From positions 62,001 to 126,000 of the IMG/VR virus record IMGVR_UViG_3300028569_002417: DNA of 64,000 bases, one strand, 5' to 3'. The notes under the pieces are model-generated. The model saw only the letters and a program-made list of their open reading frames with translations. It made no database searches and was not told the origin of the DNA. Made by a program: the position numbers and the translations under genes. How positions within the stretch are numbered: position 1 is the first letter of the stretch; each line of letters begins with the position of its first letter. Shown one piece after another: positions 40,410 to 60,426 of this stretch.

Positions 40410-43400
40410 ATGCGAATAAATCAACCACCATTATTTTCAGGGGCAGTAGTCAGCGGATTTATAGGTGACTCTGCTGTAGTTTCTGGATCTGTTGGATCGG
40501 GGCAAATTGGATCAATTCATTTAGCAAGCGGTACAATTCCTGCTGGTTTTAGCCTTACTTCGGGTGTTATTGTTTCTGGTTTTATTGGTGATAATGCTGT
40601 AAATTCTGGTAATATTAGTAGTGGTGCGATTGGTGTCAATCATTTAATTTCTGGTTTAATTACGACATTGTCCCTTGGTTCTGGTCAAGTAACTAGCGGA
40701 AATATTGCTTCTGGTGTTGTATTCAGATTACTTTCAGGAAGTATTAATAGTGGTAATATTGGTGATAATGCTGTAAATTCTGGTAATGTTAGCAGTGGAA
40801 GTATTGGACTAGTTCATTTAGCAAGTGGTACTGTATTTTCTGGTACATTCGTTGCCTCTGGAACAGTACAGAGCGGATCATTAGGTAATGCTTCTGTTGT
40901 ATCTGGAAGTATCGCTAGTGGTGTGATTGGACTCAGTCATATTGCGTCTGGTGTAATTCAATCGGGGATTACACTAACTTCTGGTTCTGTTGTTTCTGGT
41001 TTTATAGGTAACAATGCTATTAATTCTGGTAATGTTAGTAGTGGTAGTATTGGTGTCAATCATTTAATTTCTGGATTAATTACAACATTATCTCTTGGTT
41101 CTGGTCAAGTAAACAGTGGTAATATTGCTTCTGGTGTTGTATTTAGATTGCTTTCTGGATCAATTAACAGCGGAAACATTGGCGACACTGCTGTAAATTC
41201 TGGTAATATTAGTAGTGGAAGTATCGGTTTATCACATTTAGCCTCTGGTACTGTATTTTCTGGTACATTCGTTGGTTCTGGAACAGTACAAAGTGGATCA
41301 TTAGGTAATGCTTCTGTAGTTTCTGGTAGTATCGCTAGTGGTGTGATTGGACTCAGTCATATTGCTTCTGGTGTAATTCAATCAGGTATTACATTAACTT
41401 CTGGAAGTGTTGTTTCTGGTTTCATTGGTGACGCTGCTGTAAATTCTGGTAATATTGCATCTGGGCAGATAACTGGTAATCATCTTGCATCTGGAACGGT
41501 ATTAACACAATTAACTTCTGGAATTATTACTTCTGGAATGATTGGTAATGCTGCTGTTGTCTCTGGAAGTATTGCTAGTGGTGCGATTATTGCGGCTGGT
41601 ACAAATGCACAGTTGCAATATAATCTCTCAGGATATTTTGCTGGCACAGATGCAATTTCCTATAACAATTCGTCTGGTCATTTATCCATAACCGCACAAA
41701 GTGGAACATATGTTCCCTTAATTATTAAGGGAGCGGCGCTTCAGAGTGCTGATTTATTTGATATAATTGATGCTTCTGGAAACAAAAAATTATATTTTAG
41801 TTATACAAATAACAGTGTCGCAACAATGTCCATAAGAGCGCATGGTGGCGGTTTTGGTACTATGGGCTGGGATATTGGAAGTGATTCAGCATACAATTAT
41901 CTCAAACCAGTAGGTGGCGCTGGTCCCGGTCAATGGAACATAAGAGATACAGTTATAATGAATATGTATGGTCCATCATATACAGGACCAAATACATCTC
42001 CTCTTCCAAACATTTATTTTGTTGAACAAAATACTAATGCTGGGATTAGCATAGAACCAAGTTTTGTAAGCACGATTCCAAATTTAACATTTTCTGCAAT
42101 TTCTTATGGCTCTGGAACAACGAGAGCAACATTGATTGCTGGCAGATTAACTCTTGCCACTCCTAATCCAACAAATGTTGGTCTGACTGTAAAAGGTGCA
42201 AATTCTCAAACTGGGAATTTGCAAGAATGGTCCAATAGTAGTGGATCTGCTTATGCATCCATCAATGCTTCTGGAACTTTTTTTGGAACGCTTTCTTCTG
42301 GAATAGTTATATCAGGAAATATTGGTAACAATGCTATAAATTCTGGAAATGTCAGCAGTGGAAGCATTGGACTGGTTCACCTTGCTTCTGGCACTGTATT
42401 CTCTGGCACATTTGTTGGTTCTGGTAGTGTTCAGAGTGGATCATTGGGCGACTCTGCTGTTCTTTCGGGAAACATTGGGTCAGGACAAATTGGAAGTATA
42501 CACTTAGCTTCTGGAACAATTCCTGCTAGCTTTAGTCTTACTTCGGGTGTTATTGTTTCTGGTTTTATTGGCAACAATGCTGTAAACAGTGGGAATATTA
42601 GTAGTGGTAGTGTTGCTGGTCCTCATTTAGCTTCTGGTGTGATTAATGCTATTTCTGGTAATGTTGCTATTAGTTCTGGTAGTCTTAGTGTTAACACTAT
42701 TTTTGCAACAAGTGGAAATGTTGGTGTTGGGACAAGTCTAGTTCTTAGAGCAGCAAATGCTGTTACTTCTGGTGCTGGTGGGGATATTATCCTACAACCG
42801 GGAACACAAAGTGTTACGGGTGGTAACGGAAGCGTTAAATTTTTAAGAACTAATTCAACAACAGCAATTGCTGTATTGCCAAATTACAATTCAAATAATG
42901 GAGGAATACTATGGTACAGAAAATCTGATAATGCTGAAATTGCTCGTATCAATTGTTCAGACCCTGACTCTGGTTCGCTTAATTTTGATTGTCCATTTTC
43001 TTTTAATTTTAATAATCAAGCAAGTTTTAATGGCAGCATAGCCATCATTGCCAATGGCAGTATAGCCATTGGTGGACTAGTTGGTGGAGCACTTAAGTCA
43101 GCAACAAGACATATAATTGGAGTTTATTCAGATTATCTTACTACTTCTGGTGGATCTTTTTCTTTTCCATCAAATACTACCAATATCAATTCAGATACAA
43201 ATAACTTAACTATTAGTGCATCGGCTTTCCAAAGACTAAATGTGACATCAGGTTGCACAATAACTGGCTTATCTTTCCCAACTGCTGCCTCACATGTAGA
43301 CGGCAGATTCATCAGACTTGCAAACGTAGGAACGCAAAATCTAACATTATCAAATCAAGATGCGCTCAGTAGTGGAAACAATAGATTTTATAATTACACA

Positions 43401-45083
43401 AGTGGAAACATAGTTCTTGGACCAAATCGCTTTGTTGATGCAGTTTACGATAGTACAACAGGTGGTTGGAGGGTTTATGGTGATAATTATCCTTATGTTT
43501 TACCAACAACAAATGGAACAAGTGGACAATTACTCACAACTAATGGTGTTAATAATTTAGCTTGGGCTAATGGATTTGCTCTAACTTCTGGAAGTGTTAC
43601 TTCTGGTTTTATTGGTGATAATTCTGTAAACAGTGGTAATGTTAGTAGCGGAAGCATTGGATTGGTTCATCTTGCTTCTGGCACTGTATTTTCTGGTACA
43701 TTCGTAACCTCTGGTAGTGTTCAGAGTGGAGCATTGGGCGACTCTGCTGTCCTTTCAGGAAGCGTTGGGTCAGGACAAATTGGAAGTATACACTTAGCTT
43801 CTGGAACAATTCCTGCTATCTTTAGCCTTACTTCGGGTGTTATTGTTTCTGGAATGATCGGAAATGAAGCTGTTGTTTCAGGAAGTATTGCAAGTGGAAG
43901 TATAGGGCAATTTGCAATTGCAAGTGGTAGTATCACAACTGAACATATCGCTTCTGGCGCTGTAATAAATGCAGATATTGCTGATAATGCAGTTACTAGT
44001 GGTAAAATATCTTCTGGCATTGTTGGTTCGGTTCATATTAGTAATGCTGGAGTTCTTTCTGGTAATATTGGTTCTGGACAGATAGGGTTTTATCATATTG
44101 CTTCTGGTGTAATTTCTACTGCTACACTTGGTTCAGGGCAAGTGACTTCTGGTGTAATTGCTAGCGGAAGTATTAGTAGTTTTAATTTATCTTCTGGTGT
44201 TGTCCAAAGTGGTCATATTGGTAATAATGCTGTAAATTCTGGAAATATAAGTAGTGGAAGTATTGGTGTTAATCATTTAATTTCTGGTTTGATTACGACA
44301 TTGACATTGGGAAGTGGACAGGTAACGAGTGGAAGTATAGCAAGTGGAAGTATAGGACGATTTCATATTAGTAATGCTGCTGTCGTCAGTGGAAGTATAG
44401 CAAGTGGAAGTATAGGACGATTTCATATTAGTAATGCTGCTGTCGTCAGTGGAAGTATAGCAAGTGGAAGTATAGGAACGAATCATTGTTCATCTGGTAC
44501 ACTTTTCACAGTAACAAATCCTTCGACAAATAGAGTTATCACAAGTTTGGCATCTGGTACAAATTCTGCAACAGCTAATACCAATTTGACTTATGATGGA
44601 TCAACTCTTACCGCTAATTCAGTAACGAGTGGTAGCACTGTTATAAGTGTTACTGGTCAAGCGGGTCAATTATTTTCTGTAACTGATAGTAATACTGGAG
44701 ATATTTATCAAATAGGTGATATTTCTGGTGTTCCGATCATGACTGTAAACAGTAATGGTTATGTAAAAATTGTAAGTAATACTTTTACTGGTCAATCTTC
44801 TAGTTTTACTGCTTTTAGTATTGCTGATACATCTGGTGTTGCAGCATTTATTGAATATTATGCGATCAACACAACAACTAGTGCATATAGGGCTGGAACT
44901 GTTTCATCTGTTTGGAATTCCACTGCTGACACGCTTGTTTATTCTGAAACATCTACAGACGATTTGGGTGGATCAACAATTGGACTTACATTTAGTGCTG
45001 CAATTACAAGTAACAATTTCGTTTTAACTGCTAATATAACTACTGGTACTTGGACCATTAAACTAGGAACTAGGGTGCTATAA
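40410..45083 (+). CDS. Ser-Gly pentapeptide-repeat fibre protein (1557 aa)
   Basis: (SGxI/Vx)n blocks separated by unique beta-rich domains. Confidence 0.8.
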   Translation: MRINQPPLFSGAVVSGFIGDSAVVSGSVGSGQIGSIHLASGTIPAGFSLTSGVIVSGFIGDNAVNSGNISSGAIGVNHLISGLITTLSLGSGQVTSGNIASGVVFRLLSGSINSGNIGDNAVNSGNVSSGSIGLVHLASGTVFSGTFVASGTVQSGSLGNASVVSGSIASGVIGLSHIASGVIQSGITLTSGSVVSGFIGNNAINSGNVSSGSIGVNHLISGLITTLSLGSGQVNSGNIASGVVFRLLSGSINSGNIGDTAVNSGNISSGSIGLSHLASGTVFSGTFVGSGTVQSGSLGNASVVSGSIASGVIGLSHIASGVIQSGITLTSGSVVSGFIGDAAVNSGNIASGQITGNHLASGTVLTQLTSGIITSGMIGNAAVVSGSIASGAIIAAGTNAQLQYNLSGYFAGTDAISYNNSSGHLSITAQSGTYVPLIIKGAALQSADLFDIIDASGNKKLYFSYTNNSVATMSIRAHGGGFGTMGWDIGSDSAYNYLKPVGGAGPGQWNIRDTVIMNMYGPSYTGPNTSPLPNIYFVEQNTNAGISIEPSFVSTIPNLTFSAISYGSGTTRATLIAGRLTLATPNPTNVGLTVKGANSQTGNLQEWSNSSGSAYASINASGTFFGTLSSGIVISGNIGNNAINSGNVSSGSIGLVHLASGTVFSGTFVGSGSVQSGSLGDSAVLSGNIGSGQIGSIHLASGTIPASFSLTSGVIVSGFIGNNAVNSGNISSGSVAGPHLASGVINAISGNVAISSGSLSVNTIFATSGNVGVGTSLVLRAANAVTSGAGGDIILQPGTQSVTGGNGSVKFLRTNSTTAIAVLPNYNSNNGGILWYRKSDNAEIARINCSDPDSGSLNFDCPFSFNFNNQASFNGSIAIIANGSIAIGGLVGGALKSATRHIIGVYSDYLTTSGGSFSFPSNTTNINSDTNNLTISASAFQRLNVTSGCTITGLSFPTAASHVDGRFIRLANVGTQNLTLSNQDALSSGNNRFYNYTSGNIVLGPNRFVDAVYDSTTGGWRVYGDNYPYVLPTTNGTSGQLLTTNGVNNLAWANGFALTSGSVTSGFIGDNSVNSGNVSSGSIGLVHLASGTVFSGTFVTSGSVQSGALGDSAVLSGSVGSGQIGSIHLASGTIPAIFSLTSGVIVSGMIGNEAVVSGSIASGSIGQFAIASGSITTEHIASGAVINADIADNAVTSGKISSGIVGSVHISNAGVLSGNIGSGQIGFYHIASGVISTATLGSGQVTSGVIASGSISSFNLSSGVVQSGHIGNNAVNSGNISSGSIGVNHLISGLITTLTLGSGQVTSGSIASGSIGRFHISNAAVVSGSIASGSIGRFHISNAAVVSGSIASGSIGTNHCSSGTLFTVTNPSTNRVITSLASGTNSATANTNLTYDGSTLTANSVTSGSTVISVTGQAGQLFSVTDSNTGDIYQIGDISGVPIMTVNSNGYVKIVSNTFTGQSSSFTAFSIADTSGVAAFIEYYAINTTTSAYRAGTVSSVWNSTADTLVYSETSTDDLGGSTIGLTFSAAITSNNFVLTANITTGTWTIKLGTRVL
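44328..44477 (+). repeat. Exact 60-nt tandem repeat x2.5
   Basis: Lines 44341 and 44401 are identical. Confidence 0.97.
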
Positions 45084-46530: not shown

Positions 46531-46540
46531 AGGAGAATTT

Positions 46541-46855
46541 ATGAATATTGAGCCAATTATTTCGACGAATCCAGTTACAACAGTTCCAGTTCCAGAAAAG
46601 GTTTATGACACATGGTTTCTATCAGATTTTCGTCTAAGCGCAACAGGTGATCGTAAATTTGTTGCAGAAATATTCTGGACATTAGGAAAAATTAATGCAG
46701 ATGGAACATCAGAACTAAGCGAAAAAAGAACAAATCACTTTATTCCAGATCTTTTAAGTGAAGAAAGTTTACTCGCAAACCCAGAAATTGCAACTTTAGT
46801 TCCAGATTTCTTGTCTACTCTGGCAGCAGTTAGCAAAAGAGCTAATGTTATTTAA
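46541..46855 (+). CDS. Hypothetical protein (possible fibre assembly factor)
   Basis: AAGGAG SD; located within the fibre cluster. Confidence 0.6.
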   Translation: MNIEPIISTNPVTTVPVPEKVYDTWFLSDFRLSATGDRKFVAEIFWTLGKINADGTSELSEKRTNHFIPDLLSEESLLANPEIATLVPDFLSTLAAVSKRANVI

Positions 46856-46917
46856 TGATAACAGACTAAATACAATAAATAAGTTTTCTTTTTGGAAAGT
46901 GAAGAAAAGGAAATAAA

Positions 46918-49452
46918 ATGTCTAATGAATTTGTAGTTAAAAAAGGCTTGATTCTAAATAATCAAGCCCCAGTTAAGTTTACAGATGCGTCTGGAACAAT
47001 CTATGTTGCTGTTCAAGCTCCAAGTGCTGTTAGTTCAGGCAATGTAAATATAACTCTACCCGGATCTTATGGTACAAGTGGTCAAATACTAGCAACCAAT
47101 TCATCTGGAACACTTTCTTGGGTCACACCAGCATCAATAACTTCTGGTTCTGTCACTTCTGGATTTATTGGTGACGCTGCTGTAGTTAGTGGATCTGTTG
47201 GAAGTGGTCAAATAGGAGCAGTTCACTTAGCGTCTGGTACTATCCCTTCTGGTTTTGCTTTATCTTCTGGATCTGTCATCTCTGGCTATATTGGTGATGC
47301 TGCTGTAGTTAGTGGAAGCATTGCTTCTGGACAAATTGGTGCTAACCACATTGCTTCTGGTGTAATTCCGACAAGTTTCAGCTTAACTTCAGGAATTGTT
47401 CAGAGTGGGAACATTGGTAACAATGCAGTAAACAGTGGAAATGTCAGTAGTGGAAGCATTGGTTTAGTTCATCTTGCAAGTGGAACTGTATTCTCTGGAA
47501 CATTTGTTGCATCTGGAACAGTACAAAGTGGATCATTAGGTAATGCTTCTGTAGTTTCTGGTAGTATCGCTAGTGGAAGCATTGGAAGTATTCATTTGGC
47601 TTCTGGAGTTTTAGTTCCGACTTATATTTCTGGAACAGCAAATCAAATTCTTGGAATCAATGCTGGAGCAACAGCAAATGAATACAAAACACTTGCTGCT
47701 GCTGGAAATATATCAATTACAAATAATCCAAATCTGGTTACAATTGGAACAACAGGTGAAGTTCCTCTTGGATATTACATTTCAGCATATTCAGATGTGA
47801 CACAAACTAATACAGGATTAGCTTCTGGCAATTTAATGACATATAATAATGTTGCCGAAGCAAATGGAATTTCAGTTAGATCTGGATCAAATGTCGTATT
47901 TGGATACCCCGGAACTTATAATATTCAGTTTTCAGCACAACTTGATAAAACAGATTCTGGATTAGATCAAATTGATATTTGGTTAAAATTAAATGGATCA
48001 AATGTTGATAACAGTAGCACAAGACTTGATTTGACTGGTAATGATGCTAAAGTAGTAGCAGCATGGAACTGGGTTTTATCTGTTTCTTCAGGCGATTATA
48101 CAGAAATTGCTTGGTATTCAGCAGATGCAGATTTAAGGTTGTATGCCGAAGCATTAATTAGCGGTCGTATTCACCCAGCCATCCCATCTGTTATCATGAC
48201 AGCTGTTCAGGTCATGAACACAAGTGCTTATGGAACAGTGACTAATGTTGATTTAAGTTTACCTAATCAATTTGTTGTAAGTGGTAATCCAGTAGTTTCT
48301 TCTGGAACATTAAGTGCTGCATGGGCATATCAACCACAAAATACATTCCTAGCTGCTCCTGCAAATACTAGTGGAACTCCAAGTTTCAGAGTTATTTCTT
48401 CTGGTGATCTTATTTCTGGACAAGTAATGTCTGGAAGCATTAGTAGCGGACAAATTGGAAGTATTCATTTAGCTTCTGGAGTTGTTGTTGGCTTTTTGAC
48501 TTCTGGAATTATAACTTCTGGAATGATTGGCTCAGGGGTAGTTTTCAACAATAATATTGCATCTGGTGGAGTTGTTAGTGGAAAACTTGCTGACGGTTCT
48601 GTTGTTTCTGGAAGCATAGCTTCTGGTCAAATTGGTGTTAGTCATTTAATTTCTGGATTAATTACAACATTAACATTAGGAAGTGGTCAGGTAACTAGTG
48701 GAAACATTGCTAGTGGAGTTGCATTTAGATTACTTTCTGGAAGTATTACTTCTGGATTTATTGGTGATAATGCTGTTGTTTCTGGAAGCATAGCATCTGG
48801 ACAGATTGGACAATTCCATCATGCTTCTGGATCGGTAACAAGTGGAAGCATTGGTAATGCTGCTGTAGTAAGCGGAAGTATAGCATCTGGGCAAATTGGT
48901 GTTAATCACTTAATTTCTGGATTAATCACAACATTGTCCCTTGGTTCTGGTCAGGTAACCAGCGGAAATATTGCTAGTGGAGTTGTGTTTAGATTGCTTT
49001 CTGGAAGTATTACTTCTGGATTTGTTGGTGATAATGCTGTAAACAGTGGAAATATTAGTTCTGGACAGATATTTACATTACATATTGCTTCAGGTGGATT
49101 ACTTTCGGGAGCAATTGGTAGTGGTCAAATTGGTTCTTTTCATTTAGCTTCTGGTGCAGTCACTTCTGGAGACATAGGTAACGCTGCTGTAGTTAGTGGA
49201 AGTATCGGATCTGGTCAGATTGGACAATTTCACTTAGCTTCTGGTGTAGGTGGTGGTGGAGCTAGTCTTACTTCAGGTTCTGTTACATCTGGATATATTG
49301 GAAATGCTGCTGTAGTAAGTGGAAGTATTGGTAGTGGACAAATTTCTTATCCGCATATAGCAGTTGCATCTGGATTTATAGCTGGTCAAATGTTGGCTAT
49401 AAGTTATTCTGGAACTCTATATTTTAGTAATATAGATGGAGGGACTTTCTAA
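46918..49452 (+). CDS. SG-repeat fibre protein with central C1q/TNF-like domain
   Basis: SG repeats; G.YNIQFSAQ..., IWL..NG, GDY.EI.W; ends IDGGTF. Confidence 0.75.
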   Translation: MSNEFVVKKGLILNNQAPVKFTDASGTIYVAVQAPSAVSSGNVNITLPGSYGTSGQILATNSSGTLSWVTPASITSGSVTSGFIGDAAVVSGSVGSGQIGAVHLASGTIPSGFALSSGSVISGYIGDAAVVSGSIASGQIGANHIASGVIPTSFSLTSGIVQSGNIGNNAVNSGNVSSGSIGLVHLASGTVFSGTFVASGTVQSGSLGNASVVSGSIASGSIGSIHLASGVLVPTYISGTANQILGINAGATANEYKTLAAAGNISITNNPNLVTIGTTGEVPLGYYISAYSDVTQTNTGLASGNLMTYNNVAEANGISVRSGSNVVFGYPGTYNIQFSAQLDKTDSGLDQIDIWLKLNGSNVDNSSTRLDLTGNDAKVVAAWNWVLSVSSGDYTEIAWYSADADLRLYAEALISGRIHPAIPSVIMTAVQVMNTSAYGTVTNVDLSLPNQFVVSGNPVVSSGTLSAAWAYQPQNTFLAAPANTSGTPSFRVISSGDLISGQVMSGSISSGQIGSIHLASGVVVGFLTSGIITSGMIGSGVVFNNNIASGGVVSGKLADGSVVSGSIASGQIGVSHLISGLITTLTLGSGQVTSGNIASGVAFRLLSGSITSGFIGDNAVVSGSIASGQIGQFHHASGSVTSGSIGNAAVVSGSIASGQIGVNHLISGLITTLSLGSGQVTSGNIASGVVFRLLSGSITSGFVGDNAVNSGNISSGQIFTLHIASGGLLSGAIGSGQIGSFHLASGAVTSGDIGNAAVVSGSIGSGQIGQFHLASGVGGGGASLTSGSVTSGYIGNAAVVSGSIGSGQISYPHIAVASGFIAGQMLAISYSGTLYFSNIDGGTF

Positions 49453-50030: not shown

Positions 50031-50032
50031 AA

Positions 50033-52213: not shown

Positions 52214-52229
52214 AAATTTAGGATAAAAA

Positions 52230-54464
52230 ATGCCAATTAGTTTTCCATCATCACCAACTTCAGGACAAAGATATGAATTCAGCTTCAATGCTTGGATTTA
52301 TAATGGTACATTTTGGCGTTCAACTAACGCCTCTGGAAGCATTACAAGCGGTCAGTTGGGCGACAATGTTATATTCAGCGGTAATATCGCCTCTGGGCAG
52401 GTAGGACAGTACCATCTTGCTAGTGGAGTAGGTGGTGGAGGCGGAGGTAGCCTTACCTCTGGACAAGTCCAGTCGGGGAATATAGGTAACAATTCCGTCA
52501 CAAGCGGCAACATCGCTTCTGGTCAGGTGGGACAGTACCACATTGCCAGCGGAGCAATTGTTCTTTCTTCTGGTCAAGTCCAGTCGGGGAATATTGGCGA
52601 CAATGCAATATTTAGCGGTAATATTGCAATTGGACAAATTGGTTTTTTCCATTTAGCGAGTGGAACACTTGAATTGAGTTCTGGGCAGGTCACAAGTGGC
52701 GAAATTGGCAATAATGCAGTCTTGAGTGGCAACATCGCTTCGGGTCAGGTGGGACAATTTCACATTGCAAGTGGAGCAATTGTTTTATATTCTGGACAAA
52801 TTCAGTCTGGAAATGTGGGCGATAATGCTATATTAAGCGGAAATATTGCATCAGGACAGGTAGGACAATTTCATGTATCAAGTGGAGCCATTACTGTTTC
52901 CTCTGGTCAAGTTCAAAGTGGAAATATTGGCAACAATGCGGTCCTGAGTGGTTCAATTTCTTCGGGTCAGATAGGTCAGTTTCATCTTTCAAGTGGTTCT
53001 GTGACGAGTGGAGCCATAGCCTCTGGTCAAATATTCTCGTTTCACATTGGAAGTGGCGCTGTTCAAAGTGGACAATTAGGTAGCGGACAAGTAGGTTATC
53101 CTCACATTGCCTCAGGAGCAATCACATCAGGCAAGCTGGCGGCAGGCGCTGTGCTAAGTGGAAACTTGGCTTCAGGTCAATTCGGCGGTTTGCATCTGGT
53201 TTCAGGTGCTGTTCAGAATTTTCACATACAGTCGGGTCAAATTTTTGATTATCATATTTTGTCTGGTGCTGTCATAAGTGGAAAATTATCACTAAACGCA
53301 GTTTTAAGTGGAAACATTGCTTCGGGAAATATCGACTGGATTCATATTGCCAACGCTGGTGTGAGAAGCGGAAACATAGCCAGTGGTCAAATCGGCGCTC
53401 CTCACTTGGCAAGCGGTGCAGTCAGAAGCGGAGCCATAGCATCAGGTCAAATCGGACAATTTCACATTTCGTCGGGAGCAATATCAAGTGGTAAAATAAG
53501 TTCAGGATCTATTCTTAGTGGAAATATAGCAAGTGGTCAAATCGGTAGCGGTCACCTAGCGGCAGGTGTCGTCCTTGGGGCTAATATAAAATCAGGCGAT
53601 ATTAAGTCAGGCATGGTTGGAGACGGCGCTGTATTTAATTTTAACATTGCCTCAGGTCAAATATTCAATAACAACATAGCATCAGGCGTTATCTTCAACA
53701 CAAATTTGGGATCAGGTTCTGTAACAAGTGGTGCCATAGCTTCAGGTCAAATTGGACAATTTCATCTTGCCAACAACTCTGTAAGAAGTGGAAATATTGC
53801 CAGCGGTCAGGTCGGTGGTTTTCATATTTCAAGTGGAACTTTTATAAGTGGAGTAATCGCAAGTGGAATTATAGGTTCGGTTCACCTGAGTTCAGGAGCC
53901 TTGTCAAGTGGTCAAATCGGCAGTGGTCAGATAGGCACATTCCATCTTGCGAGTTCATCTATTATTGGAGCCAATATTGGTTCAGGTCAAATTGACACTG
54001 TTCATATTTCTCCTACTGCTGTTGCTTTGCAGGCTTACAGATTGATGACAACAACTTTTAATGCTGGCGAGCTTATTTCTGGAATAAAATCTGTTTGTAT
54101 CGGTTCTGGTGGTGTGATTTTATTAGCTCAATGTGGTAGTGGATTGAGATTACCAGCAATAGGTGTCACTATGAGTGGAGCTTTAAGTGGAACTGCGTGT
54201 TCTGTTGTTTCTTACGGAAGAATATTTAGTGCTGCTTCTGGGATGATTGCAAGTGGATTTGAAGGTAACTTACTTTATGTTGGTTCTGGCGGAATTGTTG
54301 TGAACAGAAGTGGCTTTACTATTGGTGGTGTTTTGTCAGCACCGGGACTTTCTGGTGATATGCAGCAGTCAATCGGCGTGTATGTTAGTGGCGGAATGTT
54401 TGTTATGCCAAGCTTGTGCGTCCACAGAAGTGGATTTGCAAACAACTTACCTTATGATGTTTAA
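52230..54464 (+). CDS. SG pentapeptide-repeat fibre protein (744 aa)
   Basis: Nearly continuous SGNIA-SGQIG-xxHLA repeats; termini shared with the next gene. Confidence 0.8.
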   Translation: MPISFPSSPTSGQRYEFSFNAWIYNGTFWRSTNASGSITSGQLGDNVIFSGNIASGQVGQYHLASGVGGGGGGSLTSGQVQSGNIGNNSVTSGNIASGQVGQYHIASGAIVLSSGQVQSGNIGDNAIFSGNIAIGQIGFFHLASGTLELSSGQVTSGEIGNNAVLSGNIASGQVGQFHIASGAIVLYSGQIQSGNVGDNAILSGNIASGQVGQFHVSSGAITVSSGQVQSGNIGNNAVLSGSISSGQIGQFHLSSGSVTSGAIASGQIFSFHIGSGAVQSGQLGSGQVGYPHIASGAITSGKLAAGAVLSGNLASGQFGGLHLVSGAVQNFHIQSGQIFDYHILSGAVISGKLSLNAVLSGNIASGNIDWIHIANAGVRSGNIASGQIGAPHLASGAVRSGAIASGQIGQFHISSGAISSGKISSGSILSGNIASGQIGSGHLAAGVVLGANIKSGDIKSGMVGDGAVFNFNIASGQIFNNNIASGVIFNTNLGSGSVTSGAIASGQIGQFHLANNSVRSGNIASGQVGGFHISSGTFISGVIASGIIGSVHLSSGALSSGQIGSGQIGTFHLASSSIIGANIGSGQIDTVHISPTAVALQAYRLMTTTFNAGELISGIKSVCIGSGGVILLAQCGSGLRLPAIGVTMSGALSGTACSVVSYGRIFSAASGMIASGFEGNLLYVGSGGIVVNRSGFTIGGVLSAPGLSGDMQQSIGVYVSGGMFVMPSLCVHRSGFANNLPYDV

Positions 54465-54477
54465 GAGAATATAAAAA

Positions 54478-57400
54478 ATGCCAATCAGCTTTCCATCTTC
54501 GCCTTCATCTGGACAAAGATATGAGTTCAGCTTCAACGCTTGGACTTATAATGGTACATTTTGGCAATCGACGGGATCTTCTGGCCAAATTACCAGTGGT
54601 GCAATAGGCGACAATGTAATTTTTAGTGGCAATATTGCCAGTGGAAGTATTAGTGCTTTTAATTTAGCTAGTGGAGTAGGTGGTTCCAGTCTTGTTCTGA
54701 CAAGTGGTTCAATTACATCTGGTTTTATTGGAAATGATGCAGTAACAAGCGGAAACATCGCATCAGGTCAGGTGGGTCGAGTCCAAATAAATGATTATAA
54801 TGTGGGAACTAATCTCTCCAAAATAAGAGATGGAATAAAAGGATATTTTGCTGGTGGAAGTACTGGAGATTATGTTGCAACAGCAGACAAATTAACATAT
54901 TCGACTGACACGACTGCTGCACAAACCACTGCGAATATAAGTCAAGCAAGAGAGCAATTAGCAGGAATTTCAGAAGGATCAACAAAAGGTTATTTTGCTG
55001 GTGGAATTAATGCAGGAGGTTTTATTGCAACAGCAGATAAAATAACATATTCAAATGATACGACTATAGCACAAACCACTGCAAATTTAAGTAAAGAAAG
55101 ACAAGGATTGGCTGGTTGTTCTGGACAAGGAACAAAAGGTTATTTTGCTGGTGGATCTAGTGGTGCACTTGTTGCAACAGCAGACAAATTAACATATTCG
55201 ACTGACACGACTGCTGCACAAACCACTGCGAATATAAGTCAAGCAAGAGAGCAATTAGCAGGAATTTCAGAAGGATCAACAAAAGGTTATTTTGCTGGTG
55301 GTCGTAGTAGTTTAACCCAGTACAGCACAACGGATAAGATATTATATTCCACAGATACAACTGCTGCACAAACAACAGCCAATCTAAGTCAAGCAAGACG
55401 ACAATTGGCTGGATGCGATGGAGAAGGAAAAAAAGGCTATTTTGCTGGTGGGAATGGTCCTGTGGCAACAGCAGACAAATTAACATATTCCACAGACATA
55501 ACTGTCGCCCAAACAACAGCAAATTTAAGTCAAGCAAAAAATAGTTTAGCAGGTTGTTCTGGAGAAGGAACAAAAGGATTCTTTGCTGGTGGGACTACTG
55601 GTGCCACGCCTATCGCAACAGCAGATAAAATAACATATTCAACTGATACAACTATAGCACAAACAAGTGCTAATTTAAGTCAAGCAAGATTTAACTTGGC
55701 AGGTGTTGGAAATAATTATTCAACAGTATTTGGAGATAATTGCGTTTTTTCTGGCAATATTTCTTCAAGCGAAATTGGATCAATTCATTTTGGATTCTCG
55801 TATCCAACTAGCGGTTCAATTAAATCAGGCAATATCGGCGACAATTCTGTAAATTCTGGAAATATTGGTAGTGGACAAGTTGGAAGATTTCATATAAGTT
55901 ATTTTAATCCGGGTAATAATTTAGCTTTAGTTAGAGGTGGAATAAAAGGTTATTTTGCTGGTGGATATATTGCTGGTGGTGTTGCAACAGCAAATAAATT
56001 AACATATTCAACAGACACAACTACAGTTCAAGCAACAGCAAATTTAAGTCAGTCAAGAGGTTTTTTGGCAGGTTGTTCTGGAGAAGGATCAAAAGGTTAT
56101 TTTGCTGGTGGATCTAATGACGCATCTACAGCATTAGCAACGGCAGATATAGTATCATATTTAACAGATACAACTGCTGCTCAAACAAGTGCAAATCTAA
56201 GTCAAGCAAGATATATATTAGCTGGTTGTTCTGGAGAAAAAACAAAAGGTTATTTTGCTGGTGGAAACACAGGTGCTGCTGTTGCAACAGCAGACAAATT
56301 AACATATTCAACTGACACAACTGCCGCTCAAGCAAGTGCAAATCTAAGTCAAGCGAGAGGATACTTAGCAGGAGTTTCTGAAGGATCAACAAAAGGTTAT
56401 TTTGCTGGTGGATCTACATCTGATGAATCTGGTGTAGCATTATTAACAGCAGATAAATTAACATATTCAACAGACACAACCGCTGCCCAAACATCAGCTA
56501 ATCTAAGTCAAGCAAGATCAGGATTAGCAGGTTGTGACGGAGATGGAATAAAAGGTTATTTTGCTGGTGGATATACTAGCAACTATGTTGCAACATCAGA
56601 TAAATTAACATATTCAACAGACACAACCGCTGCCCAAACATCAGCTAATCTAAGTCAAGCAAGATTATCTTTGGCTGGAATTTCAGAAGGATTAACAAAA
56701 GGTTATTTTGCTGGTGGAAACATAGGTTCAAGTGTTGCAACAGCAGACAAATTAACATATTCAACTGACACAACTATTGCCCAAACAACTGCAAATCTAA
56801 GTCAAGCAAGAGCACAATTGGCTGGAGCAAGTCAAGAATTCACTAGTGTATTTGGCAACAATTCAATAACTTCTGGCAACATATCATCTGGTCAAATTGG
56901 ACAATTTCATTTTTTATCTGGAGTTATACGAACTGCAACGAATATCGTAAACAGTGGAAATTTTGGTGATTCTTCCGTTAATTCAGGAAACATTGCATCA
57001 GGAGTTGTATCCCAATTTAATTTTTCTGATTCTTCTATTTACTCTGATTCAGTAAGAAGCGGAAACGTATCAACATTTAAGTTCGCCAATAATGCCGTTT
57101 TCAGCGGAAATATAAGTAGTAGCAATACAATAACAACTGTAAACTTAGCTTCAGGAGGCGTGCGGAGTGGTGCATTTGGTGACAATGCAATAAGTAGTGG
57201 AGATATTCTCAGCGGTAGAATCACCAGAGATAACATCAGTAGCGGAGCATTCCAATCATTTAATATTGCGAGCGGATCAATAAGCACTGTGAAACTGGCA
57301 AGCGGAGCAGCAGTAGGCGCATTCAACCTTGCAAGCGGAATTGTCGTGAGCGGAAACATTGCTTCTGGCTCTATATTTTTTACCCCATTTATTGATGGAG

Positions 57401-60400
57401 CTATTGAAAGCGGTAACATTGCAAGCGGCGCAATTGGAAATACACATTTGGGGGCTGCGTCCGTAACAAGTGGTGCAGTTCCTAGTGGAACAGTTATTTT
57501 CAATATGGTTGGTGCGAATGCAACAGTTGCTTATAACTTTGCAGATGTCGCATTAGCTTCAGGAAACTTTGCACTCCAGTCTGTAACTGGTGAAAATCTT
57601 GCAGATGGACTTTGGCCAATTCCTACTGCATTTTATGTGTCTGGCGGTATTACCGCTTTCATGTTCAATAACAACTCAATTGTTAGTGGATCAATATCAA
57701 CAACAACCACTTTAATTAGTCAAGGTTATTTTGCAGGTGGATCTACAGGAGCAAATGTTTCAACAACAGACAAAATATTATATTCAACAGACACAACTGC
57801 CGCTCAAACATCTGCCAATCTAAGTCAATCAAGAAATGAATTGGCGGGAATTTCTGATTATACAACTAATGGTTATTTTGCTGGTGGAGCAACATCTTCG
57901 TTTTCTGGACATGTTGCAACAACAGATAAAATTGTATATTCAACAGACACAACTGCCGCTCAAACATCTGCAAATTTAAGTCAAGCAAGACAAGGATTGG
58001 CTGGATGTTCAGGAGAAAGAACAAAAGGATATTTTGCTGGTGGAACTACTCATCAAGTAAACAGCTTAAACACAGCAGACAAGCTAACATATTCAACAGG
58101 CACAACTACCGCACAATCAAGTGCAAACTTAAGTCAAGCAAGATATTACCTTACTGGAATTTCAGAAGGAACAACTAAAGGTTATTTTGCTGGTGGGCAG
58201 AGTAGCACCGTTTTAGTAACGGCAGACAAATTAACATTTTCAAATGATACAACTGCTGCTCAAACAACAGCGGATCTTAGCACGGCAACAGCCTATATTT
58301 CTGGATGTTCTGGCGAAGGAACTAAAGGTTATTTTGCTGGTGGTGGTACATTTGCCATAACAATTAATGCATATAAATTAACATACACAACAGATACAAC
58401 TACCGCTCAAACTACTGCAAATTTAAGTCAAGCAAGAAGAGAATTAGCAGGAATTTCAGAAGGATCAACTGAAGGTTATTTTGCTGGCGGTAACGGTCCT
58501 GTGACAACAACGGATAAGCTATTATTTTCTACTGATACAACTGCTGCACAAACAACCGCTAATTTGAGTCAAGCAAGAAATAGTTTAGCAGGAATTGATG
58601 GCGCACAAAATTATTTAATCATACCTTACCTAGTCACTTCTGGAAAACTAACAACAACAGAAGCCAACGAAATTCGTTTTACAAACTTGGCATCTGGTTC
58701 AGTATTAAGCGGAAATATAGTTTCTGGTGTTGTATTCAGCGATGCAACCACAAATAACTTCTCAAACGCAGGAGTAAGAAGCGGAAATATTGCCTCTGGA
58801 CAAGTTGGTAGAGTTCATTTTGCCAATGAAACAATACTTTCAGGAAATATAGGAAGCGGTGTAATAAGATTCCCAGAATTCTTCGGCGATACTACAACAT
58901 ACACAAATATTGCCAGCGGACAAATTGGGAATGTACATCTTGAATCAATCGATGTTTCACTTCAAACAAAAATGGGATATTTTGCTCCTGTTACATTTTT
59001 TGGTATAACAGGAAATAAATTAAATTATTCCACAGATACAACTTCTTCAATTATAATTTTGAACCAAGCAAGAGTTGCTTTAACTGGAATATCAGAAGGA
59101 TTAACAAAAGGATATTTTGCAGGAGGATATAGTACAGGCGGGACAATTGTTGCAATAACAGAAAAATTCTCATATTCAACAGAAACAACTATTACTCAAG
59201 CAACAGCAAATCTAAGCCAAGCAAGATATCGTTTGGCGGGATGCTCTGGAGAAAGAACAAAAGGTTATTTTGCCGGTGGAACTACTGGAGGATCAGATAT
59301 TGCAACAGCAGACAAATTAACATATTCAACAGACACAACTGTCGCACAAGCAAGCGCAAACTTAAGTCAAGGAAGATTTTACCTTGCTGGAATTTCAGAA
59401 GGATTAACAAAAGGTTATTTTGCTGGTGGAGTATCAATAGCAATCGTTGCAACAGCAGAAAAATTAACATATTCAACAGACACCACAACGGCACAAACAA
59501 CTGCAAATTTAAGCCAAGCAAGATCAGGGGTGGTTGGATGCTCAGGTGAAGGAACAAAAGGTTATTTTGCTGGCGGAGATACAGATTCAGTAGTCACAAC
59601 AGCAGATAAAATAACATATTCAACTGATACGACTGTTGCTCAAACAAGTGCTAATTTAAGTCAAGCAAGATTTTCATTATCAAGTGTATCCCAAGGATCT
59701 ACAAAAGGTTATTTTACAGGAGGAACACTCGATTTTAGTATTATTTATAAAACAGCAGATAAATTAACATATTCAACAGAAACAACTGCTGCTCAAACAA
59801 CAGCAGATTTAAGTGGAGCAAATTATGATTTTGCTGGAATTGATGGTGGCGTGTCTTATTCTCAATTGATTGCAAGCAGCAAGCTTTCATCTGGAACAAT
59901 TGGTCTTACAACAGCAAGTGGACAGAATGCAGCATTCCCATACAATCTCTCAGAAACAGCAGAAATAAATACAAACAGACCAATGTTTGATTATTTCGTT
60001 TTCCAAGAACAGTGTTCAGGCATCAAAGCAGTTTGCATTGCATCTGGAAGCAGAGTTGTAAGGGCACAAAGAGCAAGTGGAATGAGACTTCCAGCAATTG
60101 GCGTTACAAGCGGAACTGTCAACAGCGGAACAATTGGAGCAGTTTACTATTACGGATATGTTGGAAGAACTGGAACATTCGCTCAAAACTCTGGTCTAAA
60201 TAATGGAATTTCTGGATTCCAAGGAAGACCTCTTTATGTCGGATCGGGCGGAAATATCGTTAATCAAAGCGGAATGCGTGGAGCATCCTCTGGCGCACCA
60301 TTCATATCAGGCGACATGCAACAACAAATAGGCATCGCCATGAGCGGAGGACTATTCGTTATGCCAAGTCCAAGAGTTGTAAGATCAGGATTCAGAGGCA

Positions 60401-60426
60401 CATTACCTTATAATCATCCTGCTTAA
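54478..60426 (+). CDS. SG-repeat fibre carrying four 6-bladed Kelch-like propellers (1982 aa)
   Basis: 24 repeats of KGYFAGG-var-ATADKLTYSTDT...ANLSQAR-xx-LAG in 4 groups of 6. Confidence 0.85.
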   Translation: MPISFPSSPSSGQRYEFSFNAWTYNGTFWQSTGSSGQITSGAIGDNVIFSGNIASGSISAFNLASGVGGSSLVLTSGSITSGFIGNDAVTSGNIASGQVGRVQINDYNVGTNLSKIRDGIKGYFAGGSTGDYVATADKLTYSTDTTAAQTTANISQAREQLAGISEGSTKGYFAGGINAGGFIATADKITYSNDTTIAQTTANLSKERQGLAGCSGQGTKGYFAGGSSGALVATADKLTYSTDTTAAQTTANISQAREQLAGISEGSTKGYFAGGRSSLTQYSTTDKILYSTDTTAAQTTANLSQARRQLAGCDGEGKKGYFAGGNGPVATADKLTYSTDITVAQTTANLSQAKNSLAGCSGEGTKGFFAGGTTGATPIATADKITYSTDTTIAQTSANLSQARFNLAGVGNNYSTVFGDNCVFSGNISSSEIGSIHFGFSYPTSGSIKSGNIGDNSVNSGNIGSGQVGRFHISYFNPGNNLALVRGGIKGYFAGGYIAGGVATANKLTYSTDTTTVQATANLSQSRGFLAGCSGEGSKGYFAGGSNDASTALATADIVSYLTDTTAAQTSANLSQARYILAGCSGEKTKGYFAGGNTGAAVATADKLTYSTDTTAAQASANLSQARGYLAGVSEGSTKGYFAGGSTSDESGVALLTADKLTYSTDTTAAQTSANLSQARSGLAGCDGDGIKGYFAGGYTSNYVATSDKLTYSTDTTAAQTSANLSQARLSLAGISEGLTKGYFAGGNIGSSVATADKLTYSTDTTIAQTTANLSQARAQLAGASQEFTSVFGNNSITSGNISSGQIGQFHFLSGVIRTATNIVNSGNFGDSSVNSGNIASGVVSQFNFSDSSIYSDSVRSGNVSTFKFANNAVFSGNISSSNTITTVNLASGGVRSGAFGDNAISSGDILSGRITRDNISSGAFQSFNIASGSISTVKLASGAAVGAFNLASGIVVSGNIASGSIFFTPFIDGAIESGNIASGAIGNTHLGAASVTSGAVPSGTVIFNMVGANATVAYNFADVALASGNFALQSVTGENLADGLWPIPTAFYVSGGITAFMFNNNSIVSGSISTTTTLISQGYFAGGSTGANVSTTDKILYSTDTTAAQTSANLSQSRNELAGISDYTTNGYFAGGATSSFSGHVATTDKIVYSTDTTAAQTSANLSQARQGLAGCSGERTKGYFAGGTTHQVNSLNTADKLTYSTGTTTAQSSANLSQARYYLTGISEGTTKGYFAGGQSSTVLVTADKLTFSNDTTAAQTTADLSTATAYISGCSGEGTKGYFAGGGTFAITINAYKLTYTTDTTTAQTTANLSQARRELAGISEGSTEGYFAGGNGPVTTTDKLLFSTDTTAAQTTANLSQARNSLAGIDGAQNYLIIPYLVTSGKLTTTEANEIRFTNLASGSVLSGNIVSGVVFSDATTNNFSNAGVRSGNIASGQVGRVHFANETILSGNIGSGVIRFPEFFGDTTTYTNIASGQIGNVHLESIDVSLQTKMGYFAPVTFFGITGNKLNYSTDTTSSIIILNQARVALTGISEGLTKGYFAGGYSTGGTIVAITEKFSYSTETTITQATANLSQARYRLAGCSGERTKGYFAGGTTGGSDIATADKLTYSTDTTVAQASANLSQGRFYLAGISEGLTKGYFAGGVSIAIVATAEKLTYSTDTTTAQTTANLSQARSGVVGCSGEGTKGYFAGGDTDSVVTTADKITYSTDTTVAQTSANLSQARFSLSSVSQGSTKGYFTGGTLDFSIIYKTADKLTYSTETTAAQTTADLSGANYDFAGIDGGVSYSQLIASSKLSSGTIGLTTASGQNAAFPYNLSETAEINTNRPMFDYFVFQEQCSGIKAVCIASGSRVVRAQRASGMRLPAIGVTSGTVNSGTIGAVYYYGYVGRTGTFAQNSGLNNGISGFQGRPLYVGSGGNIVNQSGMRGASSGAPFISGDMQQQIGIAMSGGLFVMPSPRVVRSGFRGTLPYNHPA
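54838..59850 (+). repeat. Kelch-like repeat blocks (~54838-55710, 55945-56835, 57721-58600, 58972-59850)
   Basis: Unit about 141-159 nt; repeats counted manually. Confidence 0.9.

What the first reader, a model, noticed from the sequence alone, without database searches (positions are those of the whole stretch)
40410..60426. Period-5 Ser-Gly repeat family with regularly spaced His shared by five genes
Seen: (S-G-x-[IVL]-x)n, e.g. AVxSG-NIASG-QIGxx-HLASG, in the 1557-, 844-, 726-, 744- and 1982-aa proteins, with His recurring about every 20 aa in the purest tracts. It is not collagen. Inference: an uncharacterised beta-helical shaft, possibly metal-stapled in a trimer, used as a universal spacer between different domains.
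Basis: partly seen in the sequence, partly recalled or inferred. Interest (0 to 1): 0.6.

Follow-up and report, generated by a model that had tools for sequence, protein, structure and literature searches.

The report
Ser-Gly decapeptide shaft of phage fibres
Five neighbouring fibre genes of a 225-kb uncultured phage share a very regular five-residue Ser-Gly repeat with conserved histidines; it is most likely a thin three-chain beta-stranded fibre shaft, common in phages but with no curated family or solved structure.

Summary
In the 225.5-kb phage genome the repeat occurs only in the five ORFs named (112, 73, 69, 50 and 20 pentads, against 4 or fewer in any other ORF).

- **Repeat unit.** The pentad is G-x-[IVL]-[AG]-S. 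His sits almost only at the residue just before the hydrophobic one.
- **True period.** His-His spacings are multiples of 10 (44:0 in the window, 939:102 in 120 homologues). Asn shares the His phase and Gln has the opposite phase. The structural unit is therefore a decapeptide of two unlike pentads, usually arranged as a 20-mer.
- **Known families.** Pfam and NCBIfam have no matching model, and no solved structure contains the repeat. Only PHROG tail-fibre clusters match.
- **Fold predictions.** AlphaFold monomer models fail (pLDDT 49-56). A three-copy model passes its controls (score 0.78 against 0.00) and puts every fifth aliphatic residue on the three-fold axis.
- **Spacer role.** Related phages join the same end domains through tracts of different length.

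Best reading: an intertwined trimeric beta shaft used as a modular spacer. Metal stapling is not supported: there is no HxH motif, and Asn or Lys can occupy the His position. I rate this a new variant of a known kind, of moderate interest.

The parts
40410..45083 (+). Fibre gene 1 (P0001, 1557 aa). Repeat tracts at aa 11-390 (nt 40440-41579), 626-737 (42285-42620) and 1061-1357 (43590-44480). Three non-repeat domains lie between and after them.
   Evidence: ORF and translation; tracts. 112 in-phase pentads. His spacing mostly 41. Matches phrog_13518 (E 8e-34) and phrog_892 'tail fiber' (E 5e-16).
44328..44447 (+). Perfect tandem duplication of one 60-nt (20-aa) repeat unit inside gene 1.
   Evidence: family D13: copies 44328-44387 and 44388-44447 are 100% identical. 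This shows recent expansion by one 20-mer.
46918..49452 (+). Fibre gene 2 (P0002, 844 aa). Tracts at aa 72-239 (nt 47131-47634), 496-594 (48403-48699), 608-770 (48739-49227) and 787-811 (49276-49350). A non-repeat domain of about 250 aa lies at aa 242-488.
   Evidence: 69 pentads; phrog_13518, 892 and 28766.
50033..52213 (+). Fibre gene 3 (P0003, 726 aa). Short tracts at aa 365-455 (nt 51125-51397) and 643-687 (51959-52093), between larger non-repeat domains.
   Evidence: 20 pentads; phrog_28766 'tail fiber', weak.
52230..54464 (+). Fibre gene 4 (P0004, 744 aa), the purest example. Tracts at aa 36-60 (nt 52335-52409), 78-102 (52461-52535) and 115-595 (52572-54014). aa 78-250 hold four 37-aa units and aa 251-600 hold seventeen 20-aa units.
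   Evidence: 111-nt repeat family D15. AF2 monomer pLDDT below 50 over aa 1-603. Three-copy model of aa 430-744 scores 0.78 against control 0.00.
54039..54434 (+). C-terminal globular 'bead' domain of P0004 (aa 604-735). P0005 has the same domain at aa 1844-1979 (nt 60007-60414).
   Evidence: pLDDT about 90. Fold matches to phage capsid decoration proteins and the phi29 head-fibre base, Z 7-10.6. Profile hit to the C-terminal part (chain residues 122-238) of Anabaena phage A-1(L) neck fibre gp82, chain 8keg_a, E 5e-5. 53% identical between P0004 and P0005.
54478..60426 (+). Fibre gene 5 (P0005, 1982 aa). Ser-Gly tracts at aa 36-106 (nt 54583-54795), 421-470 (55738-55887), 827-1033 (56956-57576), 1389-1416 (58642-58725) and 1431-1490 (58768-58947). 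They separate four blocks of a different repeat of about 49 aa.
   Evidence: 50 pentads; phrog_19111 E 6e-142 for the second repeat; DNA families D1, D4 and D8.

Best explanation
The repeat is the shaft of homotrimeric phage fibres.

**Model.** Three parallel, in-register chains wind around a common three-fold axis as a thin beta-stranded rod. It is of the same general kind as the narrow triple beta-helix of T4 gp34 and gp12. Every fifth residue (Ile/Val/Leu) goes into the core, and the Ser-Gly dipeptides make the turns.

**Structural unit.** The unit is a decapeptide of two unlike pentads, not a pentad:
- pentad A, G-(Q/A)-(V/I)-(G/x)-x, whose aliphatic residue meets its symmetry mates on the axis;
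- pentad B, (G/F)-(H/N)-(I/L)-A-S, which packs against the neighbouring chain.

Two decads usually form the 20-mer SG-N-I-A-SG-Q-I-G-x-x-H-L-A-SG-A-V-x.

**Role of His.** The conserved His (or Asn) sits beside the B core residue at a chain-to-chain interface. It most likely serves as a hydrogen-bonding or packing residue that ties chains together, not as a metal ligand.

**Role of the tract.** It is a rigid, length-adjustable spacer. Duplication or loss of 20-, 37- or 41-residue units changes fibre length. Recombination within tracts re-joins different end domains.

**Shown:** sequence pattern, phase rules, conservation, distribution and mosaicism. **Predicted only:** trimer and core geometry. 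**Inferred:** the role of His and the rod dimensions.
For: 1. **Phage and fibre context.** The genome encodes a tail sheath, a gp19-like tube, RNR and gp46/47-like nucleases. The five proteins match PHROG tail-fibre clusters. tblastn finds the repeat in proteins annotated tail fibre, host specificity J or minor tail in cyanopodoviruses, roseophages, Arthrobacter jumbo phages and others.
2. **Monomer folding fails.** AF2 gives pLDDT below 50 and no strands over aa 1-603 of P0004. A pure tract with its own alignment gives pLDDT 56 and pTM 0.26, and its best PDB match has Z 2.2.
3. **Three copies of P0004:430-744 pass the control test.** The score is 0.78 (runs 0.81, 0.78, 0.78) against a best control of 0.00. 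Partner pLDDT is 78-80 and the runs agree in at least 93% of contacts. In calibration the mark was reached by 20 of 30 proteins solved as pairs and 1 of 23 solved as single chains, though the job differs from that calibration (three copies, own alignment). Nearly every shaft residue touches another chain. The lowest-error pairs are i:i for V468, I478, V498, I508 and V518, and i:i+4, i+5 and i+9 between neighbouring chains.
4. **Independent sequence support for two unlike pentads.** His-His lags are multiples of 10 (44:0 and 939:102). Asn at i-1 is in phase with His and Gln is out of phase.
5. **His is conserved.** It is 96% conserved in four orthologues of 73-84% identity, against 80% for all i-1 residues.
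6. **The S-TIP37 tail fibre-like protein.** After its T7 tail-fibre N-terminal domain (PF03906) come 29 in-phase decads D-x-A-V-T-T-A-K-I-A. They align in the same A/B register, with His opposite Lys. T7-type fibres are trimers (PMC10575957).
7. **The C-terminal bead.** It resembles trimeric decoration proteins and the C-terminal part of trimeric A-1(L) gp82 (PMC10966104).
8. **Closest solved analogue.** The T4 gp34 triple beta-helix is 2 nm wide, with an Ile/Leu core, Gly/Ser/Asn turns and only inter-chain hydrogen bonds (PMC5537660).
9. **Mosaic relatives and unit-sized indels**.
Against: - The trimer is only a model. The tool gave no coordinates, so cross-section, handedness, rise per repeat and His geometry could not be inspected.
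- The job differed from its calibration (three copies, own alignment).
- The interface lists are not perfectly three-fold symmetric around aa 534-550.
- A 20-residue super-repeat of four distinct pentads is also what a four-sided pentapeptide-repeat coil would give.
- The only PDB sequence hits to the tracts are pentapeptide-repeat proteins (E 0.03-0.7, same register).
- The low-confidence monomer model resembles those proteins at Z 5-8.
- No experiment shows that these proteins are in the virion.
Confidence: 0.6

Rival explanations
1. Each chain folds alone as a right-handed four-sided beta-helix of the pentapeptide-repeat (Rfr/MfpA/Qnr) type. Four pentads (20 residues) make one coil, so the His residues form a ladder on one face.
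For: - The pattern G-(N/Q/H)-I-(A/G)-S mirrors A-(D/N)-L-x-x.
- phmmer finds only pentapeptide-repeat proteins in the PDB, in the same register (4yfo E 0.028, 2j8k E 0.095).
- The low-confidence monomer model of aa 450-604 aligns to 4yfo, AhQnr, MfpA and Np275/276 at Z 5.3-8.0.
- The commonest super-repeat is 20 residues with four distinct pentads.
- One phage record annotates such a protein as 'pentapeptide repeats containing'.
Against: - No Pfam Pentapeptide model matches any of the five proteins or 36 homologues.
- AF2 monomer confidence is poor twice. The pure tract has no fold match above Z 2.2.
- His lags of 10, 30 and 50 are common, and units of 37 (7 pentads + 2) and 41 (8 + 1) residues recur. 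These would break a 20-residue ladder.
- Gly rather than Ala at i-2, and Ile/Val rather than Leu/Phe at i, would under-fill a four-sided core (inference).
- Phage fibres and the attached bead domain are trimeric.
Confidence: 0.17
2. A metal-stapled trimer. The three symmetry-related His of each 20-mer bind a metal ion on or near the fibre axis, as the HxH sites do in the T4 gp37 needle.
For: - His is the best conserved residue type at its position (96%).
- It recurs regularly.
- Metal sites on the axis are known in T4 gp37 and gp12 fibres (established knowledge; cited in PMC9509320).
Against: - None of the five proteins has an HxH motif.
- His lies directly beside the residue that the model puts in the core, so in a beta-strand it should point the other way.
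- No His-His pair is among the 25 lowest-error contacts shown. His 512 instead touches Ile 503 and Ile 508 of a neighbouring chain.
- Asn occupies the same phase position. Lys occupies it in 74% of the 31 ten-residue rows tabulated for S-TIP37.
Confidence: 0.07
3. A flexible, largely unstructured Ser/Gly-rich linker with no defined fold.
For: High Ser + Gly content (about 33%). AF2 monomer models have no secondary structure.
Against: - An aliphatic residue sits strictly at every fifth position, with strict phase rules over hundreds of residues and 120 homologues.
- Residues are 75-82% identical at four of the five pentad positions (67% at i+1) in orthologues of 73-84% identity.
- The trimer model is confident.
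- True poly-Gly hinges exist separately, for example at P0004 aa 68-73.
Confidence: 0.04

Closest known systems
Narrow triple beta-helix of T4 long and short tail fibre proteins gp34 and gp12 (PMC5537660)
   Same: A trimeric, intertwined, parallel beta rod in a myovirus fibre. It has an aliphatic core on the three-fold axis and small Gly/Ser/Asn residues in the turns. Globular domains interrupt it, and it serves as a shaft.
   Different: The T4 helix has no clear sequence motif. Here the sequence is a strict penta/decapeptide repeat running for up to 480 residues, with a conserved His/Asn position. There is no detectable sequence similarity to gp34 or gp12. The geometry here is only predicted.
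Pentapeptide repeat proteins (A(D/N)LXX; Rfr fold: MfpA, Qnr, Np275/276)
   Same: Period of five with a central aliphatic residue, a small residue at i-2 and a polar Asn/Gln/His at i-1. Weak in-register sequence matches.
   Different: No Pfam Pentapeptide hit. Gly rather than Ala at i-2. A two-pentad (decapeptide) phase rule. The predicted state is an intertwined trimer, not a monomeric four-sided coil. The context is a phage fibre, not a DNA mimic or lumenal protein.
Decapeptide tract of T7-like cyanophage tail fibre-like proteins (S-TIP37 gp39; also P-SSP2/3, P-GSP1, NATL1A-7)
   Same: It aligns with P0004 in the same A/B register (BLASTP E 4e-34 for the pair). Val is the A centre and Ile/Leu the B centre, with Ala at B(i+1). 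The tract lies directly after the T7 tail-fibre N-terminal domain, which is the shaft position.
   Different: The consensus is D-x-A-V-T-T-A-K-I-A: no Ser-Gly turns, and Lys where this family has His or Asn. That part of cyanopodovirus fibres is also unresolved structurally (PMC10575957).
Bead-chain neck fibre of Anabaena myophage A-1(L) (gp82-gp81-gp80; PMC10966104, PDB 8keg)
   Same: The C-terminal bead of P0004 and P0005 matches the C-terminal part of gp82 (chain residues 122-238; E 5e-5). Homologues carry 1-4 such beads strung between Ser-Gly tracts, which is a bead-on-string trimeric fibre.
   Different: A-1(L) builds its chain from many separate small proteins without Ser-Gly tracts. Here the beads and long shafts are in one polypeptide.

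Membership tests
Pentapeptide repeat family (Pfam PF00805/PF13599/PF13576; Rfr fold) | Matches a Pfam Pentapeptide model | tested here: not met
   No Pentapeptide hit at E 0.1 or better for the five proteins, nor at E 0.001 or better for 36 homologues.
Pentapeptide repeat family (Pfam PF00805/PF13599/PF13576; Rfr fold) | Tandem pentads with a central hydrophobic residue and a small residue at i-2 | tested here: met
   i = I/V/L in 95%; i-2 = Gly 63% (Ala only 6%); 468 pentads.
Pentapeptide repeat family (Pfam PF00805/PF13599/PF13576; Rfr fold) | A single chain folds as a four-sided beta-helix with 20 residues per coil | tested here: inconclusive
   AF2 monomers give pLDDT 49 and 56 with no strands. 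The Z 5-8 matches to such proteins come from a low-confidence region. The pure tract reaches only Z 2.2.
Triple beta-helix fibre shaft (T4 gp34/gp12 type) | Intertwined parallel homotrimer | tested here: met
   Prediction only. Three copies score 0.78 against a best control of 0.00, pLDDT 78-80, about 1000 inter-chain contacts.
Triple beta-helix fibre shaft (T4 gp34/gp12 type) | Aliphatic core on the three-fold axis | tested here: met
   In the model the lowest-error pairs include i:i contacts of V468, I478, V498, I508 and V518.
Triple beta-helix fibre shaft (T4 gp34/gp12 type) | Triangular cross-section about 2 nm wide, with only inter-chain main-chain hydrogen bonds | not testable with these tools
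   Complex prediction returns no coordinates.
Triple beta-helix fibre shaft (T4 gp34/gp12 type) | Sequence relationship to gp34 or gp12 | tested here: not met
   No such PDB hit for any of the five proteins or for profile A2.
Metal-binding fibre needle (T4 gp37 type) | HxH motifs whose His residues face the axis | tested here: not met
   Zero HxH in the five proteins. His is at i-1, beside the core residue.
Collagen-like phage fibre | G-X-Y triplet period | tested here: not met
   The period is 5 and 10, not 3.
Pfam PF25296 'Decapeptide repeat region' | Matches the model at its gathering score (45 bits) | tested here: not met
   No hit for the five proteins. The related S-TIP37 tract scores only 10.6 bits.
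PHROG tail-fibre clusters (phrog_892, 28766, 21412; also 13518, 32822) | Profile match | tested here: met
   P0004: phrog_13518 E 2.5e-40, phrog_892 E 8.4e-32. P0001 and P0002 match likewise, and P0003 matches phrog_28766 weakly (E 0.0015). P0005 matches only phrog_19111, through its other repeat. These clusters carry a name only, with no described repeat or fold.

The most novel reading that the evidence does not exclude
Pentapeptide-repeat-like sequence here builds a fibre architecture not yet described: a three-chain intertwined beta-solenoid whose unit is a decapeptide. It has one inner pentad on the axis and one outer pentad between chains, and a conserved His/Asn (Lys in cyanopodoviruses) inter-chain polar ladder. 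This would be distinct both from the monomeric four-sided Rfr fold and from the motif-less T4 triple beta-helix. It would be widespread as a length-tunable, recombination-prone shaft in fibres of many tailed phages.
Probability: 0.35. Interest if true: 0.7.

Novelty: new variant of a known kind. Interest (0 to 1): 0.5.

Why it matters
- **Annotation gap.** Fibre shafts set how far a phage reaches and how its receptor-binding domains are presented, yet most are structurally unresolved because they are flexible. This family is abundant: at least 339 metagenomic relatives, in phages of cyanobacteria, roseobacters, actinobacteria, Thermotogota (Marinitoga) and Firmicutes. It is invisible to Pfam and NCBIfam, so thousands of fibre proteins stay 'hypothetical'.
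- **Recognition from sequence.** A simple signature (the G-x-[IVL]-[AG]-S pentad, the decapeptide phase rule and His/Asn at B(i-1)) would let such shafts be recognised and their length estimated from sequence alone.
- **Engineering.** The mosaic relatives point to natural cut-and-paste sites for engineering fibre length or swapping tips in laboratory phage-host systems.
- **Protein folding.** If the trimeric decapeptide geometry is confirmed, it would show that one sequence theme can give either a one-chain four-sided helix or a three-chain helix.

Tried and rejected
- **DNA searches.** megablast and blastn of the fibre genes and the upstream 10 kb against the phage collection found nothing. 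The tool notes that the window's own genome, or one very near it, may be left out of that collection.
- **Family scans.** Pfam and NCBIfam scans of the five proteins gave nothing meaningful.
- **Locus search.** The single protein worked.
- **HMM of the 20-mer.** A 20-residue HMM gave too few full-length hits. I replaced it with direct register counting.
- **Monomer folding.** Both AF2 monomer jobs gave low-confidence models. The fold search of the second was empty.
- **Atlas.** The ESM Atlas search returned only unnamed clusters.
- **Literature.** Searches on pentapeptide repeat + tail fibre, cyanophage fibre + beta-helix, triple beta-helix + histidine, and decapeptide repeat + phage found no description of this repeat. 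The RBPseg fibre atlas paper does not mention it.
- **SU10.** The SU10 paper contains no mention of 'tip fiber', 'beta-helix' or 'triple', so it gave no description of the repeat-like stretch of chain 7z4b_EA.
- **Not run.** The 1.84-billion-protein profile search was not run, because the word search already showed many relatives and the operators asked for restraint. The reads tools were not used.
- **Considered and rejected.** Collagen (wrong period), and a simple model of one equivalent pentad per layer (it does not explain the multiples-of-10 rule or the i:i+9 contacts).


Full report
**What is in the window.** The window is bases 62001-126000 of a single 225,527-bp contig with 36% G+C. 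It encodes:
- a contractile-tail sheath (6757-9120) and a weak gp19-like tube protein;
- ribonucleotide reductase, gp46/47-like SbcCD nucleases and a Dda-like helicase;
- a 2OG-Fe(II) oxygenase and several glycosyltransferases.

It is therefore a large myovirus of the T4 superfamily in the broad sense. It is distant from cultured phages: the sheath is less than 40% identical to any record. Six close relatives exist as uncultured viral contigs in IMG/VR.

**The observation.** The five + strand ORFs lie exactly at the stated coordinates. SG-to-SG spacings are almost all 5 or 10, and Gly and Ile/Val/Leu autocorrelate at multiples of five. Counting pentads whose aliphatic centre is in phase with its neighbours gives the consensus G / x / I,V,L / G,A / S. 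Across the whole genome the five genes hold 112, 73, 69, 50 and 20 such pentads, and no other ORF of 150 aa or more holds over 4. The repeat is real, far beyond chance, and confined to these genes. At the DNA level the copies are only 60-85% alike, so the protein pattern is what is maintained. The exception is one perfect 60-nt tandem duplication at 44328-44447.

**Anatomy of the repeat.** Of 56 His in the tracts, 55 lie at i-1, directly before the aliphatic residue. In 120 homologues the figure is 974 of 1043.

His-His distances that are multiples of 5 are nearly always multiples of 10: 44 to 0 in the window and 939 to 102 in homologues. Asn at i-1 is in phase with His (offsets of 10 and 20). 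Gln at i-1 is out of phase (offsets -5 and +15). So there are two unlike pentads:
- A: G-(Q/A)-(V/I)-(G/x)-x
- B: (G/F)-(H/N)-(I/L)-A-S

The real unit is a decapeptide. The commonest arrangement is the 20-mer SG-N-I-A-SG-Q-I-G-x-x-H-L-A-SG-A-V-x, which is also the consensus in the homologues. Variant units also recur:
- 41 residues (eight pentads plus one residue), in the 1557- and 844-aa proteins;
- 37 residues (seven pentads plus two residues), in the N-terminal part of the 744-aa protein.

In the 37-mer one B pentad is replaced by a two-residue link (my reading of the sequence). A change of phase thus comes with a local irregularity.

**Conservation.** In four orthologues of the 744-aa protein (73-84% identical), His is kept in 72 of 75 cases (96%), against 80% for all i-1 residues. 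Length differences between orthologues are 37, 37, 72 and 632 residues, which are whole units or runs of them.

**Known families.** No Pfam or NCBIfam model matches the tracts in the five proteins or in 36 homologues. That includes the Pentapeptide models and PF25296 'Decapeptide'. PHROG clusters 13518, 892, 28766, 32822 and 21412 match; several are labelled tail fibre, but they describe no repeat or fold.

The word-index search found 339 relatives among the 8000 candidates scored. Nearly all are unnamed metagenomic proteins without Pfam domains. tblastn against cultured phages finds the repeat in:
- T7-like cyanophages;
- DSS3 roseophages ('host specificity protein J');
- Arthrobacter jumbo phages ('minor tail protein');
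- Marinitoga, Alteromonas, Paracoccus and Terrisporobacter phages.

No solved structure contains the tract. The only PDB sequence hits are weak, in-register matches to pentapeptide-repeat proteins (E 0.03-0.7).

**Fold.** Two AlphaFold2 monomer runs failed:
- The whole 744-aa protein with 36 sequences gave pLDDT below 50 and no strands over aa 1-603.
- A pure 171-residue tract with its own 28-sequence alignment gave pLDDT 56 and pTM 0.26, with no PDB match above Z 2.2.

Three copies of aa 430-744 gave a very different result:
- The score was 0.78 (0.81, 0.78, 0.78) against 0.00 for the best of three controls.
- pLDDT was 78-80, with about 1000 inter-chain contacts, and the runs agreed in at least 93% of contacts.
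- The tool's calibration: 20 of 30 proteins solved as pairs reach the mark, against 1 of 23 solved as single chains. This job is unlike that calibration.
- Nearly every shaft residue of the scored chain touches another chain.
- The lowest-error pairs are self-contacts of the A-pentad aliphatic residues (V468, I478, V498, I508, V518), and contacts from residue i of one chain to i+4, i+5 and i+9 of the next.
- His 512 touches Ile 503 and Ile 508 of a neighbour, not another His.

This is the signature of an in-register, parallel, heavily intertwined trimer. A residues lie on the axis and B residues sit between chains. It agrees with the A/B rule derived independently from sequence. The tool returns no coordinates, so the exact topology, dimensions and His geometry remain open.

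**Supporting context for a trimeric shaft.**
- The tail fibre-like protein of Synechococcus phage S-TIP37 has the T7 tail-fibre N-terminal domain (PF03906, E 3e-17). Twenty-nine in-phase decads D-x-A-V-T-T-A-K-I-A follow directly.
- Those decads align with the 744-aa protein in the same A/B register, with His opposite Lys. T7-type fibres are homotrimers, and the distal part of the cyanopodovirus fibre has not been resolved (PMC10575957).
- The C-terminal domain of the 744- and 1982-aa proteins (pLDDT about 90) resembles trimeric capsid decoration proteins and the phi29 head-fibre base (Z 7-10.6).
- That domain also matches the C-terminal part of the trimeric neck-fibre protein gp82 of Anabaena phage A-1(L), a 'bead-chain' fibre (E 5e-5; PMC10966104). 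In homologues it occurs one to four times per protein between Ser-Gly tracts.
- The closest solved analogue of the shaft is the narrow triple beta-helix of T4 gp34 and gp12. [quoted passage not shown]

**The spacer idea.** Within the window the tracts connect unlike modules:
- three unknown domains in the 1557-aa protein;
- one unknown domain of about 250 aa in the 844-aa protein;
- large N-terminal and central domains in the 726-aa protein;
- the bead domain in the 744-aa protein;
- four blocks of a 49-aa repeat plus the bead in the 1982-aa protein.

In related phages the modules are re-joined:
- An 884-aa protein starts like the 1557-aa protein and ends like the 726-aa protein.
- A 1275-aa protein starts like the 844-aa protein and ends like the 726-aa protein.
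- A 1408-aa protein has both ends of the 744-aa protein, with 632 extra residues of repeat.

This supports a modular, length-variable spacer that also serves as a recombination substrate.

**The histidines.** They are conserved and regularly placed, but metal stapling is unlikely:
- there is no HxH motif;
- there is one His per chain per 20 residues, next to the core residue;
- Asn occupies the same phase position, and Lys does so in the S-TIP37 tract;
- no His-His pair is among the best model contacts.

I infer a hydrogen-bonding or packing role at the chain interface. This inference is untested.

**Verdict.** It is an uncharacterised beta shaft, a trimer by prediction, and a modular spacer; the metal staple is not supported. 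I classify it as a new variant of a known kind, the trimeric beta-structured phage fibre shaft. There is a fair chance (about one in three) that its geometry is a new fibre fold.

Noticed in passing
window 54839-59837 (P0005 aa about 118-420, 500-830, 1085-1380, 1545-1790): The 1982-aa protein has a second, unrelated repeat. About 21-27 copies of a unit of roughly 49 aa (K-G-Y-F-A-G-G ... A-T-A-D-K-L-T-Y-S-T-D-T-T ... A-N-L-S-Q-A-R ... L-A-G) lie in four blocks of 5-7, at 141-159-nt spacing. It matches phrog_19111 at E 6e-142 and only weakly matches DUF6374. The blade-like length and the G-G motif suggest beta-propellers, but this was not tested.
   Followed up: partly
window 54039-54434 and 60007-60414: The shared C-terminal domain of P0004 and P0005 has the fold of phage capsid decoration or cement proteins and the phi29 head-fibre base (Z 7-10.6). 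It also matches the C-terminal part of the A-1(L) neck-fibre protein gp82. These fibres could therefore be neck or head fibres rather than tail fibres.
   Followed up: partly
window 52109-52210 (end of P0003), 52230-52320 (start of P0004), 54478-54570 (start of P0005): The same motif of about 30 aa (P-S-S-P-x-x-G-x-R-[WY] ... [WY]-x-[YN]-[DN]-G-x-x-x-W) ends one fibre protein and begins the next two. The DNA at 52223-52396 and 54471-54644 is 78% identical. Relatives keep this end-to-start arrangement. It may be a head-to-tail docking module between fibre proteins.
   Followed up: no
window 52431-52448 (P0004 aa 68-73); also P0002 aa 778-781 and P0005 aa 67-70: Short runs of Gly, or of Gly and Ser, directly after a His (or equivalent) pentad interrupt the tracts (…L-A-S-G-V-G-G-G-G…). 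They are likely hinges in the fibres.
   Followed up: no
window 45083-45856, 45841-46530 and 49452-50030: Small ORFs lie between the fibre genes. The 229-aa one has a Laminin_G_3 / concanavalin-like lectin domain (E 1e-15) and the 257-aa one a weak match to the same family. The 192-aa one is unknown. They are candidates for distal adhesins or assembly factors.
   Followed up: partly
window 34817-37909 and 60423-63999: Modification-type genes flank the fibre block. Upstream are an FkbM methyltransferase, a caspase-like Peptidase_C14 protein and a TPR + glycosyltransferase-9 protein. Downstream are a 2OG-Fe(II) oxygenase, a thioredoxin-like protein and three glycosyltransferase-like proteins. 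Whether they modify the Ser-rich fibres is unknown.
   Followed up: no
L002:1600-4254, L004:2123-5950, L005:389-4615, L006:373-6837 (IMG/VR relatives): Related uncultured phages carry differently assembled fibre genes of 884, 1275, 1408 and 2154 aa. They are built from the same end modules and up to 208 SG dipeptides, which shows rapid modular turnover of this locus.
   Followed up: partly
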